Virus record (IMG/VR): IMGVR_UViG_3300043446_003193
Location: 62,001-126,000 of that record
Length of the DNA: 64,000 nt
Reading direction: 5' to 3' (one strand)
Position numbers and translations under genes: made by a program. Shown here in pieces: positions 29,965 to 36,936 of this stretch. Position 1 is the first letter of the stretch, and the number at the start of each line of letters is the position of its first letter. The notes beneath the pieces are model-generated. The model saw only the letters and a program-made list of their open reading frames with translations, had not been told where the DNA came from and did not search any database.

Positions 29965-32730
29965 TTAAGGTTTAGTTTGTGAATTAGCAGTATATAGTGC
30001 TGCTGCTTTATTATACATTGCACTACTAATTTTCTTACCATCTAAGTATACTTGTGAATTTCCAGTAAAATCACTATCTGCATCAATTGCAAGTATATCT
30101 AATAATCTTGTCATTTCAAGCAACTGTGATATTATTGCTGCTCTAAATTGTTCTTCCGTTCCGTTTGCAATGGTTTCTAATTCGTTTTGTTCTTTTATTA
30201 TTCTTTGGGTTTCTGCATCCTGTTTTTTCTTTTCTTCTGCTGCTTTTAATGCCTCGTCTTGTTTTTTAGCATCTTCACTAAACCAATTATCCCAAATTCC
30301 TTTAATTCCACCTATTACCCCACCAACAGCTCCACCAACTGCAGTTCCAATTCCAGGTATAACACTTCCAATTGCTGCTCCATATCCACCATATTCCAAT
30401 GCAGTTGCACCAACTTTCATTCCTTTACCTTGATTAACTTTACTTCTATCTGCTTCTGCCATACCCTGTGCTTCTCTTTCTCCTCCAAAATAATCACCAG
30501 CCATAGATGCGGCTGTTCCGATTATTCCCGCTACACCTCCCTTTAAAATTCCCTTAGTCAATCCTTTCATAACGCCTTTAACTCCAACTTTACCTGCAGT
30601 TTGTAAACCAGTTTTTGCAACAGCACCAGCCGTTGATTTTCCGGCCTGTTGAAGTGCTAACTCTCTTGCTTCTTTACCCGCAAATCCTGCTAATATTTGT
30701 TTTTGTGAGAATTTTTTAACACCAGTTTCGGCTACTTCACTAGCTGCTTTTTTACCAAATATACTGGCTACTTTAGGTCCTGCTTTTTTAAATATCGTCT
30801 TTCCAATAGTACTTGCAAGAGCTACTCCACCTACTGCAACTAAAATGAATCCTAATGTTCTTAACATTTCACTAAGTTGAGTATTGAATTCAAGTTCTTT
30901 TTTAGCTTGTTCTGCTTTAGCTTGTGCGCTCCACATAGCATTAGCTGCTTCTGCATTTGCAAATTTTACACTTATTTCACCGGTTTTGAATTGTTGTGCA
31001 ATTCCGGTCATTATATTTGCTATATTATTTAATGACCCTAATTGTTTTTGTTGTTCAGTTTCTAATGGCCCACCTTTACCACCTTTTCCAATTTTCATTA
31101 TAGTTTCCATGTCCATTCCAGTTGCTTCTTGTAAAGACTGTCTTTGGAACATATTCAACTTATTTAAATCAATTCCTTTTAATTGCTGTTGTAATGCTTG
31201 AGCCGCTCCTGCTGCATCACCACCTGCAAATTTTTGTCTAACTTGAGAAAGGTCTACTTGTCTACCTAATAATGCCGATAACTGCATTTCTGATTTGATA
31301 CTATCTTTATAATTTAGTACCATTTTTTGTCCAGCTTGTAAAACTTTTTGTGCCGCAACTCCCATTACTCTAAGTGTTGCAACTTGTTTTATTAAACTTT
31401 GCTCATTACCATAATTATTTTGTAATAAAGCTTCAGATGATTCTGCTAAATCTTCGTATAAAGCGTTAATAGGAACACCGGTTGCTTTTGCCATACTCTC
31501 AGCCATTCCTAAAGAATTAACTGCTGCTTTTCCACTTAAATCTCCTACAATTCTAAATGTATTTGCAACACCTCCTAATTGTTCAGATGATACGCCAGTT
31601 CTTGCTGCAATCATCGCTATATCTGCTCCTGCTTCCTGTGCATTCTTTCCAGCTAATCCTAAATTATTAGATGCGAATTTTGTTGCTGCTCCAAAATCTT
31701 GTCCAGATACTCCCAATTTGGCCATTTGGGCCTGTAATGCTCCTGATATTTTTACATTTTGACCAAGATTCATTCCAACCTTTGTCAATTCTACATTAAG
31801 ATCAATAATACTTTCTTGCAACTTTTTGTTCATTTGTAATTGAACTTCAGTTGGCATTCCAAATAAAGATATTCCTTTGGCGTCAAATATAGTTTTCATC
31901 AAAGAACCTAAAGCGGCTCCTAATGCAAAAATACCACCTATCATAGTCATTTTACTAAGACCACTCAATGCATTTACTAATCCAGATGCACCTGATATTC
32001 CACCGGCTGCTTCCGCAGCAACTCCTGCTATTCCTTTTTGTAATTCTTGTACAGCCTTTTTACCCTCTGAAAACGCTTTTACCATTTCATGGGTAGAACC
32101 ACTTACGGATTTCATTTCATTGTATAACTTTTTAGCCTCTTCATTGGTTAAATCCATTGTATCAAGGAAAGAATCCATTTCTTCACCTGCATATTTTATA
32201 CGAGATGCTAATTGTTCTGCATCAATTTTGCCAGTTTTGAATTCTCTCATTGCTTTGGTGACAGTATTACTATAATCACCCATTGCTTTGTTAGCTTCTC
32301 TGGCAGCTGCTGCTCCTTCTTTTGTTTTGAATGCTTGTTTATCTAATTGTAATCCTATTTTTCCAATTAGACCTTCCATTGCGTTGAAAGCCTGTGCGGT
32401 TTTATTACTTTGACTTCTAATTAATGTCTGATTTCTAGACATTTTTTTAGCAATTGATAATGCTTCTTGAGCACCATCAACTTCTTCCTGCACTAAATCT
32501 CTAGCTTCTTTTCTTAGCTTTACTTCCTTCGTATATAGTTTTAATTTTTCAATTAAATCCTTTCTAAGAGCTTCATCTATTTTTTGTCCTTTGGCTTTTT
32601 CTACATTTAACTGTTTTAACGTGGCAAGTGTTTCCCTTTGAACATCTCCCAATGATTCATCGGTTGCATTTCCTGTTTTTGCAAACCCACCCGCTTCGTT
32701 TCTTAAAGTTGTATACTTTGATTTAGCCAT
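29965..32730 (-). CDS. Tape measure protein
   Basis: 921 aa helical Ala/Gly/Lys-rich protein with hydrophobic Gly-rich repeats; follows the tail chaperone. Confidence 0.8.
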   Translation of the reverse strand: MAKSKYTTLRNEAGGFAKTGNATDESLGDVQRETLATLKQLNVEKAKGQKIDEALRKDLIEKLKLYTKEVKLRKEARDLVQEEVDGAQEALSIAKKMSRNQTLIRSQSNKTAQAFNAMEGLIGKIGLQLDKQAFKTKEGAAAAREANKAMGDYSNTVTKAMREFKTGKIDAEQLASRIKYAGEEMDSFLDTMDLTNEEAKKLYNEMKSVSGSTHEMVKAFSEGKKAVQELQKGIAGVAAEAAGGISGASGLVNALSGLSKMTMIGGIFALGAALGSLMKTIFDAKGISLFGMPTEVQLQMNKKLQESIIDLNVELTKVGMNLGQNVKISGALQAQMAKLGVSGQDFGAATKFASNNLGLAGKNAQEAGADIAMIAARTGVSSEQLGGVANTFRIVGDLSGKAAVNSLGMAESMAKATGVPINALYEDLAESSEALLQNNYGNEQSLIKQVATLRVMGVAAQKVLQAGQKMVLNYKDSIKSEMQLSALLGRQVDLSQVRQKFAGGDAAGAAQALQQQLKGIDLNKLNMFQRQSLQEATGMDMETIMKIGKGGKGGPLETEQQKQLGSLNNIANIMTGIAQQFKTGEISVKFANAEAANAMWSAQAKAEQAKKELEFNTQLSEMLRTLGFILVAVGGVALASTIGKTIFKKAGPKVASIFGKKAASEVAETGVKKFSQKQILAGFAGKEARELALQQAGKSTAGAVAKTGLQTAGKVGVKGVMKGLTKGILKGGVAGIIGTAASMAGDYFGGEREAQGMAEADRSKVNQGKGMKVGATALEYGGYGAAIGSVIPGIGTAVGGAVGGVIGGIKGIWDNWFSEDAKKQDEALKAAEEKKKQDAETQRIIKEQNELETIANGTEEQFRAAIISQLLEMTRLLDILAIDADSDFTGNSQVYLDGKKISSAMYNKAAALYTANSQTKP

Positions 32731-32742
32731 TTATAAAAGATA

Positions 32743-32982
32743 TTATTTTATATCATTAACATCTATACCTTTACTTTTTAAATAAGGTTTAGCTGTTTTA
32801 TCAACATCTTTTTCTATATCAGCAATGTGTTGGTCAAATTTTTTCCAAACATTTTTTAATGATGGATATTTTTTGAATGTTCTTTCAATCCAACCATCTT
32901 GTTGATTTTTTGATTTATTTTTATAATAATCAACAAATAAATCTGTAAAATCTTCAAATTCTTTTAATGTAATTTTGGACAT
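32743..32982 (-). CDS. Hypothetical protein
   Basis: 79 aa ORF with its own upstream TATTTATA motif. Confidence 0.6.
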   Translation of the reverse strand: MSKITLKEFEDFTDLFVDYYKNKSKNQQDGWIERTFKKYPSLKNVWKKFDQHIADIEKDVDKTAKPYLKSKGIDVNDIK

Positions 32983-33026: not shown

Positions 33027-33245
33027 TTATCGCCTTTTCCCTGCTTTGTTATTTGTATTAACCTTTTTAAGAGATTCTGATTCTGATTTTTTAGTTTCTA
33101 ACAACTTATTAAAATAGAATTTTCTAAATTTGACGGGCATATTATACACATCACCCCAACTAAACCCACCATTAGAGTAATATAATAAATCAAAAATCTC
33201 CGTATGAAGTATTACCGAATAATTAGATGGAAGGGTAAAAAAAGT
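33027..33245 (-). CDS. gp51-like / tail chaperone C-terminal extension, probably reached by frameshift
   Basis: LHTEIFDLLYYSNGGFSWGDVYNMP ORF in the +1 frame overlapping the chaperone end; no ATG upstream of this segment. Confidence 0.6.
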   Translation of the reverse strand, partial: TFFTLPSNYSVILHTEIFDLLYYSNGGFSWGDVYNMPVKFRKFYFNKLLETKKSESESLKKVNTNNKAGKRR

Positions 33246-34059
33246 CAAGTCCGAATGGGACTTGGAGAGCCTCCTTCTCACCGGTAATAGGGCTTACATA
33301 ATCAAATGTAAAATCAATATCAGGAGTGATATCTTTAATGTGATTTCTAAATACTCTTGAATCCGATGCTAAAAATTGATTATTAACAAATTTTGCAATT
33401 GTACCCAAATCTCTTTCACCATTAACTGATGTAATGATGTATCTCAATCTGGTTGTAATTTCTGATGTGTTATCTTTGTTAATCTTAGAAATTGCATTTA
33501 AATCTGCATCAATTTTCTTTTCTAAACCATGAGTTAATAATTGATAAGTCAATTTTGTACCATTCTTTAAAGTGAATTCGTACTCATTGTTTCTGTTTAA
33601 TCTACTGAAGTCAATTTCTTTTGTTTTCAATTGACTCATATCAACTGTATAATTAACAACATCTTCCGTAATTGGGTCTGTTATTTGGACTGTATAATCT
33701 GGACCATATGATAGAACTCTACTAGCAATTAAGATAGCATTCTTATCACCAATTAAAAGGTCATCTGCTTTAACACCATCTTCAATTACTACTGCTTCTA
33801 ATAATTTATCTAAAAGAATTCCTTTTTTAATTAAATTAGGAGATGCAAGAATATCTTCTTCTTTTGCAGTCATTAATTTAATTGTAACTTCACCTTTAGA
33901 TAATGGATGACCTTCTGGATAACCCAACCCTTGAGATGGTAAGGTAATTGTTTCGGTTGGGAAATCGTATGATTTTTTAGGTGTAGATGAAACGGATGGG
34001 GTAGTTTGTGTAGTTGCACCCAATCCTCTTGTAACTTGTTGTTCAATATTTTCGCTCAT
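33223..34059 (-). CDS. Tail/baseplate assembly chaperone (T4 gp26-like)
   Basis: LPSQG...MTAKEEDIL...LLIGDKNAILIASR pattern; between tube and tape measure. Confidence 0.7.
   Translation of the reverse strand: MSENIEQQVTRGLGATTQTTPSVSSTPKKSYDFPTETITLPSQGLGYPEGHPLSKGEVTIKLMTAKEEDILASPNLIKKGILLDKLLEAVVIEDGVKADDLLIGDKNAILIASRVLSYGPDYTVQITDPITEDVVNYTVDMSQLKTKEIDFSRLNRNNEYEFTLKNGTKLTYQLLTHGLEKKIDADLNAISKINKDNTSEITTRLRYIITSVNGERDLGTIAKFVNNQFLASDSRVFRNHIKDITPDIDFTFDYVSPITGEKEALQVPFGLDFFYPSI
33237..33264 (-). other. Hairpin (CAAGTCC-CATTC-GGACTTG) followed by a T7 run
   Basis: Perfect 7 bp stem ending 2 nt before TTT TTT T at the junction of two overlapping frames. Confidence 0.7.
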
Positions 34060-34159: not shown

Positions 34160-34648
34160 TTAGTACTCTAAAATTGCGTAGTCGTATGCCAAAGTTAATT
34201 CAATTGATAACGGGTCGTTAGAAGCCCAATCCAATTCACCAAAGTTTGCTTGAGTGATAAATGCTCCTTTTAATGTCCATTGCTCAATCTTATCACCAAC
34301 TGGTCCTAATAAGTAGAAAGTAACATCTTTCTTATAGAAAGCTGCATAACCATCTCTACCTGTCAAAGATTCATGTGATTGACGAACCCACTCCATAACT
34401 TGCTGTGCTCCTGATGGAACGATTGGGTCATAAAGAGTAATGTTTACATCATCCCAAGTTGATTTTCCTTTAATCTTTCTCTTCACGTTGATGTGGTCTA
34501 ACTCAACTACTTCAGAAGTGAAAGTTGGTCTATTTGCTGTTTTGATAATGTATGATTCAATACCATTGATTTCCATAATGAATCTGTTACCAAGTTTTGG
34601 TTCAAAATTCTTATAAAACATCTTATCAAACTCTAATATTTCTGGCAT
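34160..34648 (-). CDS. gp19: Tail tube protein (T4 gp19-like)
   Basis: NRFIMEI...RPTF...LYDPI...QWTLKGAF...LTLAYDYA; follows the sheath. Confidence 0.9.
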   Translation of the reverse strand: MPEILEFDKMFYKNFEPKLGNRFIMEINGIESYIIKTANRPTFTSEVVELDHINVKRKIKGKSTWDDVNITLYDPIVPSGAQQVMEWVRQSHESLTGRDGYAAFYKKDVTFYLLGPVGDKIEQWTLKGAFITQANFGELDWASNDPLSIELTLAYDYAILEY

Positions 34649-34695: not shown

Positions 34696-36936
34696 TTATC
34701 CGTTAAAACTTGCACCAGTTGGTAAGATGTTGAAATCAATTTGAATGAATTCAGCTGTCTTAGTTGGTTGTAAGAAGATAGCTCCTTTCATAATGTTTCT
34801 ATCAATTACATCTGGTGTGTTGTTTGTATCATCCATTACAACTCTGAAAGCGTATAAACCTTGTCTTTGTTGGATTGATTCTAAGTAAGGATTAACAATG
34901 TTTAAGAATCTGTTTCTAGTTTCAGAAGTATTTTGTTCAAATACTAAATATCTTGAAGTAGAAGCGATGTACTTTCTAACAGTTAATAATAATCTTCTTA
35001 CATTGATTCTATCTAATGCAGATGGTTTATCTTGTAATGTTTTTTGTCCGAATACTACGATTCCTTGACCAGGGAACTGAACGATTGGGTTTACCTTTCC
35101 TTCGTATAATGTATCTTTTTCAGATTGAGTTAATCTATTCAATACACTTACTGCTCCTGTCAAACCACCTCTATTCAAACCTGCTGGTGCGAACCATTCT
35201 GCTGCTACTCTATCGTTTGCCGCAAATACGCCAGGTAATAATACTGATGGTGGAACTGTGATTAATTTGTTTGTGTTTACATCAATTGTTTTAATCCAAG
35301 GGTAGTAGAAAGCCGCGTAGTTAGAATCAACTTCACCTGCTTTAGTTACAGTTGTACTTAATGAATCGTTTGAACTACCTGCATCTGCAATATAAAATGC
35401 GTCAGCTCTTTCTTCAACCATATCCAAAATATCTGTAAATACTACATTGTGATTATTCTTATTGATACCAGGTGCTACAATCATATTGATATCCCACTCA
35501 TCTGCATTTGATAATGCTGCGATTTGTTTACCATATGCTACTGAACCACTTGCAGTTGATGTAGAACAATCAAGACCTTGTGTGTTGCTTGGTGTGATAT
35601 CAGAACCTTTGTAGATTGGAGTTGCTGGTGATTGACCATCAAATCCTTCTTGGAAACCTACTAAGAATTGTGCTACTGTTGAACCTACTGCCAATGAACC
35701 TCCGTTAGATGCATCCAATCCAAATACTGAATTTGAACCAGTTGTTGCTCCGTTAGGAATTGGTTTTAAGTAGATTTTGTTATCATCTTTAGTTACTGTT
35801 GTATCTAAATCAATACCACCATATTGTGTTGAACTTGCTGCTAAATAAACTACTGAAGGGATATTTGCTACTTGCAATGCCGAACCACTTACTGGTAATT
35901 GGTATGCAGAGTGTGCAAATGGTACTGCTTGAATTGGTGCGTTTTCGTTTAAGTTTGCAACTCTAATATATTTTGAGTTGTTTACCCAATCACCAGTTTC
36001 AGAAATTTTACCACTAGCATCAATTGATAACTTTCTATCACCAATTACTCTACTAATAAAGTTAGGAGAGTTAGGGTCTAAAGTTATATTAGCAAATGTT
36101 TCTAATACATTTTTCTTTTTATTTGTATCAGCAAATGCTCTTACTACTACTGTAAATGTACCATAATCAGTACCATTTACAGAACCTGCTGCTTTAATAT
36201 TTGTGATACCAACTTTTACTTTTGTATTTGCTGCATTACCTGCACCGATTGTTTCAAAATTGAAAAGAGAATGTCTTTCACCACTAATAGTTTGAGATAA
36301 AATAGTTGGAGTAGAAGCTTCTTGAGCATCAAATCCGAAATCTTGATCACCTAATGCTACAACACTTGCAGTTGCATTGCTATCCAAAGTAACACCGTGT
36401 CCTTTGAATAAACCATAAACATATCCACCTTTTGAACCGAATGGAGATGTACCAAATAATGCTTCAACATTATTAGTATCTTCACTATCTAAAGATGATG
36501 TACCAACAAATCCTAATTCAGAACCAGTGATAATAAAATCACCATTACCTAAGTTAGTAATAGTTGTTCCTGTAAATCCAGTTGAATCAGTATCTGTATT
36601 AAAGATGATACCAACTGATGCAGTTACACTACCACTTGCTACTGTAAATAATAAAGGATTTTGTTCAGTATATCCACCGATACCTGCTACTCTACAAATT
36701 GTTGCTGTACCTGCTTCTCTTAAATAGTTTTGAACTGCTAAAGGAGTATAATAAGTGTCATCAACATTTCCGAACAATGTTTCAAATTCTGATTGAGAGT
36801 TTACAATTGTTGGAACTAACGGTCCTTCTTTGAAAGGTCCGATGAATGCTGCACCGATTTCAGCTACACCTTGTTGTAAAAATGATAGGTCGTTTTCCTT
36901 TGTGAATACGCCTGGTGATACTATTTTCTCTGCCAT
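34696..36936 (-). CDS. gp18: Contractile tail sheath protein (T4 gp18-like)
   Basis: SPGVFTKE N-terminus; WFAPAGLNRG, GQKTLQ, DRINVRRLL, PTKTAEFI. Confidence 0.95.
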   Translation of the reverse strand: MAEKIVSPGVFTKENDLSFLQQGVAEIGAAFIGPFKEGPLVPTIVNSQSEFETLFGNVDDTYYTPLAVQNYLREAGTATICRVAGIGGYTEQNPLLFTVASGSVTASVGIIFNTDTDSTGFTGTTITNLGNGDFIITGSELGFVGTSSLDSEDTNNVEALFGTSPFGSKGGYVYGLFKGHGVTLDSNATASVVALGDQDFGFDAQEASTPTILSQTISGERHSLFNFETIGAGNAANTKVKVGITNIKAAGSVNGTDYGTFTVVVRAFADTNKKKNVLETFANITLDPNSPNFISRVIGDRKLSIDASGKISETGDWVNNSKYIRVANLNENAPIQAVPFAHSAYQLPVSGSALQVANIPSVVYLAASSTQYGGIDLDTTVTKDDNKIYLKPIPNGATTGSNSVFGLDASNGGSLAVGSTVAQFLVGFQEGFDGQSPATPIYKGSDITPSNTQGLDCSTSTASGSVAYGKQIAALSNADEWDINMIVAPGINKNNHNVVFTDILDMVEERADAFYIADAGSSNDSLSTTVTKAGEVDSNYAAFYYPWIKTIDVNTNKLITVPPSVLLPGVFAANDRVAAEWFAPAGLNRGGLTGAVSVLNRLTQSEKDTLYEGKVNPIVQFPGQGIVVFGQKTLQDKPSALDRINVRRLLLTVRKYIASTSRYLVFEQNTSETRNRFLNIVNPYLESIQQRQGLYAFRVVMDDTNNTPDVIDRNIMKGAIFLQPTKTAEFIQIDFNILPTGASFNG

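What the first reader, a model, noticed from the sequence alone, without database searches (positions are those of the whole stretch)
33027..33281. Hairpin plus U7 site predicts a +1 (or -2) recoding event fusing gp26-like and gp51-like tail chaperones
Seen: the chaperone ends GAC TTT TTT TAC CCT TCC ATC TAA. The +1 frame (ACT TTT TTT ACC...) stays open for 69 more codons encoding a protein-like segment with no ATG before it. A perfect GC-rich 7 bp hairpin ends 2 nt 5' of the T7 run. Established: lambda G/GT-type frameshifts precede tape measure genes, usually -1, with -2 in Mu. Inference: here the shift is +1/-2, and the stimulator lies upstream. Hairpin plus U-tract could also be a transcriptional slippage site or a leaky terminator that sets the chaperone/tape-measure ratio.
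Basis: partly seen in the sequence, partly recalled or inferred. Interest (0 to 1): 0.7.

Follow-up and report, generated by a model that had tools for sequence, protein, structure and literature searches.

The report
+1 frameshift in phage tail chaperone
A tail-assembly gene of this 209-kb freshwater phage almost certainly makes a second, longer protein when some ribosomes slip one base forward on a run of seven U's; more than a hundred related phages share the device and public records do not annotate it.

Summary
On the minus strand a 278-aa ORF (33223-34059; Pfam PF12322, the T4 gp26/gp51 family) lies between the tail tube and tape measure genes. It ends GAC TTT TTT TAC CCT TCC ATC TAA. 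The +1 frame stays open for 69 more codons. A 7-bp hairpin ends 2 nt before the T7.

Comparison makes this a real recoding site.
- Of 131 non-redundant relatives (23-76% identity), 128 have the extension in the +1 frame and 115 have exactly T7.
- The base before the T7 is never T, although about 64 T's would be expected.
- 34 loci have no start codon from which the extension could be made separately.
- The 33 nt upstream are far more structured than synonymous controls.
- A GGAGG lies 26 nt upstream in most loci.
- Five lineages encode the long form in frame as a second paralogue, as T4 does with genes 26 and 51. Their short genes have neither T7 nor GGAGG.
- Three lineages have T8 or T9 in another phase and the extension in the -1 frame; two of them have a hairpin 3' of the run instead.

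Best reading: ribosomal +1 frameshifting on U UUU UUU, stimulated from the 5' side. Transcriptional slippage is less likely. There is no RNA or protein evidence. It is a new variant of the lambda G/GT theme.

The parts
33223..34059 (-). Zero-frame gene for the short form (278 aa), a gp26/gp51-family hub and tape-measure chaperone
33237..33243 (-). Shift site: T7 read as U UUU UUU U (Phe273-Phe274 plus the first base of Tyr275)
   Evidence: Exactly T7 in 115 of 131 non-redundant loci. The second Phe codon is TTT in 105 of 105 FF loci, against 77% TTT elsewhere. The base before the run is never T, with 64 expected.
33246..33264 (-). 5' hairpin: 7-bp stem, 5-nt loop, ending 2 nt before the run
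   Evidence: Across the family the 33 nt upstream fold at -7.7 kcal/mol against -4.35 for synonymous controls (mean z -1.85); six control windows give z near 0. In the fixed-register helix 80.5% of cells pair.
33270..33276 (-). Shine-Dalgarno-like AAGGAGG, 26 nt 5' of the run
   Evidence: GGAGG is present in 74 of 108 loci against 5.5 expected. The spacer is 26 nt in 63 of them. Its role is inferred.
33027..33236 (-). +1-frame extension: 69 codons plus stop. Predicted long form is 274 + 69 = 343 aa
   Evidence: Conserved as protein in the +1 frame of 128 loci. The profile finds 1697 proteins, including in-frame C-terminal copies. Gene callers did not call it in this genome.
33223..33225 (-). 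Zero-frame stop codon TAA, 3 codons after the run
   Evidence: Its distance from the run varies from 1 to 5 codons among relatives, so the stop is not part of the shift site.
34160..34648 (-). Tail tube gene (gp19-like); context
   Evidence: PF06841, phrog_4542.
34696..36936 (-). Tail sheath gene; context
   Evidence: PF04984, PF17482, phrog_23.
29965..32730 (-). 921-aa putative tape measure protein; context
   Evidence: Assigned from its position, length and Ala/Gly/Lys-rich repetitive make-up. The syntenic genes are annotated as tape measure in phages immuto, LIS04 and HSE3. No family hit here.
32743..32982 (-). 79-aa ORF of unknown role between the extension and the tape measure gene
   Evidence: No family hit.

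Best explanation
The gene encodes two products. Most ribosomes stop at TAA 33225-33223 and make the 278-aa short form. A fraction slips one base forward while tRNA-Phe sits on the U UUU UUU U run, where UUU re-pairs with UUU. Those ribosomes read 69 further codons and make a 343-aa long form with the junction ...GLDFF|TLPSNY. The hairpin that refolds just behind the ribosome, next to the E site, favours forward slippage. The GGAGG 5' of it probably helps. This part is inferred.

The two forms correspond to T4 gp26 (short) and gp51 (long). They play the part that gpG and gpGT play in lambda: chaperones that act on the tape measure and hub during tail assembly and are not kept in the virion. That function is inferred from gene order, family membership and a weak fold match. 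The recoding itself is shown only by comparative evidence. Its efficiency is unknown.
For: (1) The frame offset is +1 in 128 of 131 non-redundant loci from freshwater, marine, jumbo and Gram-positive-infecting myoviruses, down to 23-26% identity.
(2) 34 of 107 loci have no ATG, GTG or TTG in the +1 frame before the conserved extension residues. In 21 loci a +1-frame stop lies directly before ACT TTT TTT.
(3) Natural in-frame long forms carry the predicted junction, for example SFFGITPQYK..HKEIF.
(4) In all five lineages looked at, the in-frame long form sits next to a separate short paralogue. Those short genes end TTC TTT, TTC TTC or TTT ATG and have no GGAGG.
(5) This genome has a single PF12322 gene.
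(6) Eleven loci have a broken run (TTC TTT T/C, TTT CTN) but always keep UUU followed by a pyrimidine and the +1 offset. Such short runs cannot support polymerase slippage.
(7) T is never found before the T7: 0 of 115 with 64 expected, and GAC 36 of 36 although GAT is 81% elsewhere. This is expected if a U UUU UUU heptamer, which is prone to -1 slippage, must be avoided. It is not expected for polymerase slippage.
(8) The only loci with the run in that other phase (L099, L159/L160, RsoM2USA) have the extension in the -1 frame and lack the 5' elements. Two of these three lineages have strong hairpins 3' of the run.
(9) Upstream structure and GGAGG are far above synonymous-codon controls.
(10) Duplexes next to the E site stimulate +1 and attenuate -1 frameshifting on 70S ribosomes (PMC6321510).
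Against: There is no transcript or protein evidence. The only RNA run holds two low-depth contigs that stop on either side of the run. No slow codon or stop follows the shift site, unlike prfB or Ty1. The GGAGG is 26 nt away, far beyond the 3-nt spacing that works in prfB, so its role is a guess. The hairpins are short (5-8 bp), whereas the hairpin tested in PMC6321510 had a 12-bp stem. Covariation in a fixed register is modest, because most stem positions are fixed by the I-P-x-G codons. In the window itself a TTG (33248) and a GTG (33281) exist in the +1 frame. In one megaphage (LR756511) the extension is a separate ATG-started ORF, so fusion is not obligatory everywhere.
Confidence: 0.74

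Rival explanations
1. Transcriptional slippage. RNA polymerase slips on the seven A's of the template, helped by the nascent hairpin as in terminator-like slippage sites. The resulting U6 or U9 mRNAs encode the long form by ordinary translation.
For: The geometry (hairpin, 2-4 nt, U7) resembles an intrinsic terminator and the hairpin-stimulated slippage of Penno et al. 2015 (cited in PMC5009743). The run is strongly conserved. The T9 variants (L159, RsoM2USA) are long enough to slip well. RNA contigs break at the run, but at depth 2, so this is no real evidence.
Against: Eleven loci with runs of only 3-4 T keep the +1 extension. A longer run (GAT TTT TTT T) would give the same product after a one-base deletion and should slip better, yet it is completely avoided. 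The phase of the run predicts the direction of the shift in all four T8/T9 cases, and phase matters to ribosomes but not to polymerase. The -1 variants have hairpins 3' of the run, the classic ribosomal stimulator. T7 is short for productive slippage, and one-base deletions are usually rarer than insertions (general knowledge).
Confidence: 0.13
2. Independent or re-initiated translation. The GGAGG plus hairpin is a split ribosome-binding site, as at the T4 gene 26-25 junction. It starts translation of the 69-84-codon ORF as a separate small protein, at TTG 33248 or GTG 33281 in the window.
For: In T4 an SD sits 27 nt from the AUG of gene 25 and is brought to 11 nt by a hairpin inside the 3' end of gene 26 (PMC3014915; sequence). 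The spacing here is 26 nt. 73 of 107 loci have some ATG, GTG or TTG in the overlap. In LR756511 the domain is a separate ATG-started ORF.
Against: 34 of 107 loci have no start codon at all, and 21 have a stop directly before the run. Candidate starts sit at inconsistent positions. The TTG of the window lies inside the stem. Independent genes would not keep a +1 overlap in 128 of 131 loci. It does not explain the conservation of T7 or the avoidance of a preceding T. In-frame fusions show that the domain works attached to the PF12322 body.
Confidence: 0.07
3. Leaky intrinsic terminator. The hairpin plus U-tract ends part of the transcripts before the tape measure gene and so sets the ratio of upstream to downstream products. 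On this reading the +1 ORF is incidental.
For: The site matches the terminator pattern. It lies between highly expressed genes (sheath, tube) and genes needed in small amounts.
Against: The +1 ORF is conserved as protein in 128 loci and in 1697 database proteins. In most relatives 3-4 nt separate the stem from the run, and the stems are weak. Loci with a broken run keep the hairpin (for example HSE3, z -5.8). Termination inside a coding region just before its stop would give non-stop mRNAs.
Confidence: 0.04
4. Artefact or decay. The T7 is a homopolymer sequencing error, or the gene is a frameshifted pseudogene.
For: Homopolymers are error-prone.
Against: Three independent samples give T7 without an indel. 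More than 100 independent assemblies share T7 and the +1 offset.
Confidence: 0.01

Closest known systems
Lambda G/GT-type programmed frameshift in tail assembly chaperone genes (Levin 1993; Xu, Hendrix and Duda 2004, 2013, 2014; summarised in PMC5009743)
   Same: Two overlapping ORFs lie between the tail tube gene and the tape measure gene. The short product is abundant. The long product shares its N-terminal body and is made by recoding near the 3' end. The arrangement is conserved despite sequence divergence.
T4 gp26 and gp51 (hub assembly chaperones; PMC3004832)
   Same: Same Pfam family: both T4 proteins match PF12322 end to end. gp51 is that body plus a tail of about 48 aa, as the long form is here. 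The FF motif sits at the end of the shared body (T4 gp26 ends ...EFFELL).
   Different: T4 uses two separate, divergently transcribed genes and no recoding. Tail-to-tail homology is only suggestive (hhalign E 0.12 and 0.016). The T4 genes are not next to the tube gene.
prfB (RF2) +1 frameshift
   Same: A forward slip of the P-site tRNA onto an overlapping cognate or near-cognate codon, with a stimulator on the 5' side that includes an SD-like sequence.
   Different: There is no stop or slow codon in the A site. The SD-like element is 26 nt away instead of 3 nt. A hairpin occupies the position next to the E site.
Synthetic upstream refolding hairpins that stimulate +1 and attenuate -1 frameshifting (Cho 2013, PMC3639245; Huang 2018, PMC6321510)
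   Same: A duplex lies directly 5' of the E-site codon of a +1-prone site. In this family the 5' elements are absent exactly where the shift is -1.
   Different: Those were engineered 12-bp G+C-rich stems tested on CUUUGA without RF2. The stems here are natural, 5-8 bp, and untested.
T4 gene 26-25 split ribosome-binding site (Nivinskas 1999; Malys and Nivinskas 2009, via PMC3014915)
   Same: An SD, an intervening hairpin and a target codon about 26-27 nt downstream, located in the 3' end of a gene 26 homologue.
   Different: In T4 the target is the AUG of the next gene and the process is initiation. Here there is no start codon at the target in a third of the loci.
Listeria phage PSA and haloarchaeal HSTV-2 +1 frameshifts in structural genes (general knowledge; HSTV-2 is mentioned in PMC5009743)
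   Same: A +1 direction in tailed-virus structural or assembly genes.
   Different: Other genes, other shift sites (a Pro codon at a stop in PSA) and 3' stimulators.

Membership tests
Pfam PF12322 T4_baseplate (gp26/gp51) | HMM match above the curated gathering score | tested here: met
   31.8 bits against a cut-off of 24.5, covering residues 54-263. Confirmed in the whole genome. T4 gp26 and gp51 both match the full profile.
G/GT-type tail assembly chaperone recoding | Overlapping ORF pair between the tube (major tail) gene and the tape measure gene | tested here: met
   Order sheath, tube, 278-aa ORF plus +1 ORF, 79-aa ORF, 921-aa tape-measure-like gene. Same order in Mel-JY01, immuto, LIS04 and HSE3.
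G/GT-type tail assembly chaperone recoding | Conserved slippery site and conserved frame relation among diverged relatives | tested here: met
   +1 in 128 of 131 loci and T7 in 115. The direction differs from the usual -1.
G/GT-type tail assembly chaperone recoding | Long fusion product actually made, at a fixed low ratio | not testable with these tools
   No proteomic data and no usable RNA data.
G/GT-type tail assembly chaperone recoding | Body binds the tape measure protein; extension binds the tube protein | tested here: inconclusive
   The complex prediction of tube plus extension returned 'no answer' (score 0.00). Binding to the tape measure protein was not tested because of the size limit.
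G/GT-type tail assembly chaperone recoding | Fold related to solved tail assembly chaperones | tested here: inconclusive
prfB-type +1 frameshift | SD-like element about 3 nt 5' of the shift codon and a stop codon in the A site | tested here: not met
   The GGAGG is 26 nt away. The A-site codon is UAC or UGG, and the stop lies 1-5 codons further on.
Hairpin-stimulated transcriptional slippage | A homopolymer run long enough to slip in all functional members | tested here: not met
   Eleven non-redundant loci with runs of 2-4 T keep the +1 extension.
Hairpin-stimulated transcriptional slippage | Run-length heterogeneity in RNA but not in DNA | not testable with these tools
   Only assembled contigs were available, and the single RNA run has depth 2.
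Intrinsic terminator | Stable G+C-rich stem directly followed by a U-tract; transcript 3' ends at that place | tested here: inconclusive
   The pattern matches in the window. Relatives mostly have 3-4 nt between stem and run, and some have no run. Transcript 3' ends are not testable.
T4 gene 25-type split ribosome-binding site | SD, hairpin, then a start codon at the position brought close by the hairpin | tested here: not met
   SD and hairpin are present, but 34 of 107 loci have no ATG, GTG or TTG there.
T4 gp51 C-terminal tail (listed as PF28602 in precomputed annotations) | Significant profile match of the extension to the gp51 tail | tested here: inconclusive
   PF28602 is not in the local library. 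hhalign aligns the right segments at E 0.12 and 0.016. Precomputed Pfam lists for the in-frame long forms show PF12322 only.

The most novel reading that the evidence does not exclude
This family is a natural example of direction-specific frameshift signalling. A composite 5' signal (GGAGG, hairpin, exactly seven U's in phase 1) drives +1 shifting. Sister lineages with eight or nine U's in another phase and a 3' hairpin drive -1 shifting to reach the same extension. Other lineages, T4 among them, replaced recoding by gene duplication. T4 would then no longer be the exception among long-tailed phages: gp26 and gp51 are its G and GT.
Probability: 0.5. Interest if true: 0.8.

Novelty: new variant of a known kind. 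Interest (0 to 1): 0.7.

Why it matters
Programmed frameshifting in tail chaperone genes is a textbook feature of long-tailed phages, and T4 is quoted as the exception (PMC5009743). This locus shows three things.
- The T4 gp26/gp51 protein family does use recoding in many relatives: aquatic, jumbo, cyanobacterial and Gram-positive-infecting myoviruses.
- In these relatives the recoding is +1, on a U7 run.
- T4's two paralogous genes are the duplicated equivalent of the short and long products.

The locus also offers a natural test bed for 5'-side stimulation of +1 frameshifting (hairpin plus SD-like element), so far shown mainly with engineered constructs. It provides internal contrasts as well: -1 variants, two-gene variants and broken-run variants.

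In practice the long form is missing from the annotation of every isolate checked (Mel-JY01, immuto, LIS04, GXN1, HSE3, RsoM2USA) and from this genome's own gene calls. Annotation pipelines could add it.

Tried and rejected
- RNA evidence. Two searches for sequencing runs found one metatranscriptome with two depth-2 contigs, which is useless for run-length heterogeneity.
- Complex prediction of the extension with the tube protein returned no answer.
- Foldseek against PDB and Swiss-Prot models found nothing significant.
- Rfam and tRNA scans found nothing.
- PF28602 could not be searched.
- A direct HMM search of the extension profile against T4 gave no hit.
- A long-range helix between the GGAGG region and the CCUUCC after the run looks good in the window (-12 kcal/mol). 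It shows no locus-specific complementarity (own pairs -8.1 against cross-locus pairs -8.8 kcal/mol), so it was dropped.
- -2 slippage would add a third Phe and cannot re-pair in the TTC TTT loci. The in-frame homologues show two hydrophobic residues before Gly. It was judged less likely.
- Literature searches for a description of this frameshift in gp26/gp51-family genes found none. The library is incomplete, so this is not proof of novelty.
- Downstream structure in +1 loci is only slightly above shuffles (mean z about -0.5).

Full report
WHAT IS THERE. The window belongs to a 209-kb virus record judged complete from a freshwater metagenome. The genes of interest are on the minus strand in this order:
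- tail sheath (34696-36936);
- gp19-like tail tube (34160-34648);
- a 278-aa ORF (33223-34059);
- an overlapping +1-frame ORF that is open to 33027;
- a 79-aa ORF (32743-32982);
- a 921-aa tape-measure-like gene (29965-32730).

The 278-aa protein matches Pfam PF12322 (T4_baseplate, the gp26 family) and phrog_150. Its 3' end reads GGA CTT GAC TTT TTT TAC CCT TCC ATC TAA. The +1 frame (ACT TTT TTT ACC CTT CCA ...) continues for 69 codons. A perfect 7-bp hairpin (33264-33246) ends 2 nt before the T7 (33243-37). An AAGGAGG (33276-70) lies 26 nt before it.

IT IS NOT AN ERROR. Contigs from three independent DNA samples cross the run without an indel. More than a hundred independent assemblies show the same arrangement.

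THE FRAME RELATION IS CONSERVED. IMG/VR holds at least 598 relatives of the 278-aa protein, and the best 80 were fetched. MAG contigs gave 29 more. A marine clade gave 37. Isolate genomes gave Microcystis phage Mel-JY01, Flavobacterium phage immuto, Listeria phage LIS04, Streptococcus phage GXN1, Bacillus phage HSE3, Ralstonia jumbo phage RsoM2USA and two uncultured megaphages.

A profile of the extension finds it just downstream of the main ORF in the +1 frame in 128 of 131 non-redundant loci. None of the isolate records annotates a frameshift. This genome's own gene calls leave the stretch empty.

IT IS NOT A SEPARATELY INITIATED GENE. In 34 of 107 loci the +1 frame has no ATG, GTG or TTG between its upstream stop and twelve codons past the run. 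In 21 loci a stop lies directly before ACT TTT TTT. The conserved extension residues (L-x-x-x-Y-x-x-x-L-H-x-E-I-F ...) begin right after the run, upstream of any Met.

NATURAL CONTROLS. The extension profile finds 1697 proteins among 1.84 billion representatives. Ten of the top 150 are 293-318-aa proteins that carry the extension in frame at the C-terminus of a PF12322 body. Their junction (for example S-F-F-G-I-T-P-Q-Y-K) is the junction predicted for a +1 shift on the Phe-Phe codons.

In all five such lineages inspected, a second PF12322 gene for a short form lies directly upstream. The short genes end F-F-W-P in four lineages and F-M-W-P in the fifth, followed by a stop. At the nucleotide level they read TTC TTT, TTC TTC or TTT ATG, have no GGAGG and have no +1 ORF. 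T7 and GGAGG are therefore not needed by the protein. They occur only where recoding is needed. This genome has one PF12322 gene only.

THE LINK TO T4. T4 gp26 (208 aa) and gp51 (249 aa) both match PF12322 end to end, and gp51 has about 48 extra C-terminal residues. Both are listed as hub assembly chaperones that are not kept in the particle (PMC3004832).

Profile-profile comparison aligns the core of the extension with the gp51 tail at the right place, but weakly (E 0.12, then 0.016 with more diverse rows). I take this as suggestive. The two-gene lineages above are the firm bridge. A review states that G-T frameshifting is conserved in long-tailed phages 'except T4' (PMC5009743). On the present evidence T4 encodes the two forms as paralogues instead.

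THE SIGNALS.
- Run. Of 131 non-redundant loci, 115 have exactly T7. In the first 108 loci the second Phe codon is TTT in 105 of 105 FF loci and the first in 100 of 105, although TTT is 77% of Phe codons elsewhere in these genes.
- Base before the run. It is never T (0 of 115, with 64 expected). Asp is GAC 36 of 36 times although GAT is 81% elsewhere, and Asn is AAC 15 of 15 times.
- Hairpin. The 33 nt upstream fold at -7.7 kcal/mol against -4.35 for synonymous-codon resamples (mean z -1.85, and 43% of loci below -2). Six control windows further upstream give z near 0. The stems differ in sequence and register between clades. In a fixed register 80.5% of cells pair, with modest covariation, because the I-P-x-G codons fix most positions.
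- GGAGG. It occurs in 74 of 108 loci against 5.5 expected, with a 26-nt spacer in 63 of them. The preceding codon ends in G whatever the amino acid.

RIBOSOME OR POLYMERASE. Four lines of evidence favour the ribosome.
- Eleven loci have broken runs (TTC TTT T, TTC TTT C, TTT CTT T, TTT CTA T, TTT CTC T) or T6, yet keep the +1 extension. All retain UUU followed by a pyrimidine, a site where tRNA-Phe can re-pair one base forward.
- The strict avoidance of T before the run makes sense for ribosomes, because it avoids the U UUU UUU heptamer that is prone to -1 slippage. For polymerase a longer run would slip more and yield the same product after a one-base deletion.
- The few loci with the run in the other phase have the extension in the -1 frame: L099 (GGT TTT TTT TGG), L159/L160 (GAT TTT TTT TTC) and RsoM2USA (GTT TTT TTT TCC). 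L088 has T8 starting in phase 1 and is +1.
- The -1 lineages lack GGAGG and the upstream hairpin. Two of the three have strong hairpins 3' of the run instead (8 bp after 5 nt; 11 bp after about 13 nt; z -3.5 and -3.2).

This mirror image matches experiments on 70S ribosomes, in which duplexes next to the E site stimulate +1 and attenuate -1 shifting (PMC6321510, PMC3639245). Transcriptional slippage may still contribute on T7 to T9 runs and cannot be excluded without RNA data.

WHAT IS NOT EXPLAINED. The role of the GGAGG is unclear. It is too far away for a prfB-type effect. With the hairpin folded, the unpaired distance to the run is about 10 nt, the geometry of the T4 gene 26-25 split ribosome-binding site (27 nt reduced to 11; PMC3014915). 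In a marine subclade GGAGG and T7 are lost together (GGAAG with TTC TTT) while the +1 extension stays. That suggests the two elements work together. A long-range pairing of GGAGG with the C-rich sequence after the run has no covariation support.

LIMITS. No RNA or protein data exist for this phage. The efficiency, the exact shift codon and the roles of the hairpin and GGAGG are all inferred. In megaphage LR756511 the extension is a separate ATG-started ORF, so other expression modes exist. The literature library searched is incomplete, and I found no description of this frameshift in it.

VERDICT. This is a real, widely conserved, unannotated recoding site. It is most likely a +1 ribosomal frameshift on U UUU UUU U with 5' stimulators, which makes a gp51-like long form of a gp26-like tail chaperone. 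It is a new variant of the G/GT theme.

Noticed in passing
L099:797-900; L159:1780-2018 (also L160); L161:2200-2498 (Ralstonia phage RsoM2USA): Three lineages of the same family reach the same extension by a -1 offset. They have T8 or T9 runs that start in the previous codon, no GGAGG and no upstream hairpin. In L099 and RsoM2USA a strong hairpin lies 3' of the run.
   Followed up: partly
L119:1595-3709; L120:5139-6927; L164; L165:3118-4891; L166:3126-4927: Two-gene lineages: a short PF12322 gene without T7 or GGAGG is directly followed by a diverged PF12322 paralogue that carries the extension in frame, as with T4 genes 26 and 51. In L166 a 1009-aa tape-measure-like gene follows.
   Followed up: yes
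L162:2200-2423 (uncultured megaphage LR756511): The extension domain is a separate 51-codon ORF that starts at an ATG overlapping the stop of the main gene (TAATG). This is a third way of expressing it.
   Followed up: partly
window 33270-33276 (minus strand): A perfect AAGGAGG lies inside the coding sequence, although the genes around it show no Shine-Dalgarno sequence before their starts. It is conserved at the nucleotide level across the family at a fixed 26-nt distance from the run.
   Followed up: partly
L128, L132, L135 (marine clade): This subclade has lost both T7 (GCC TTC TTT TGG) and GGAGG (GGAAG) but keeps the +1 extension. The joint loss hints that the two elements act together.
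   Followed up: no
L104:3240-3500, L105:3243-3521, L107:3231-3491: Extensions of the marine clade end in a conserved basic motif (V-P-x-[RK]-L-R-R-F-T). Many other extensions end in Arg/Lys clusters. This may be a binding tail.
   Followed up: no
L119:2500-2850: A 116-aa Cys-rich ORF is inserted between the two PF12322 paralogues. It is possibly a mobile nuclease-like gene.
   Followed up: no
window 33233-33243: In the only RNA run that holds this region, two 151-nt contigs end and start on either side of the run. At depth 2 this is no evidence, but run-length heterogeneity would produce this kind of break.
   Followed up: no
L116:3803-3860 (T4 gene 26 3' end, minus strand): T4 gp26 ends ...K-E-F-F-E-L-L with TTC TTT. 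The Phe-Phe codons lie inside the hairpin of the known split ribosome-binding site of gene 25.
   Followed up: partly
window 32743-32982 (minus strand): A 79-aa ORF with no family match lies between the extension and the tape measure gene. Mel-JY01 has a small ORF in the same position.
   Followed up: no
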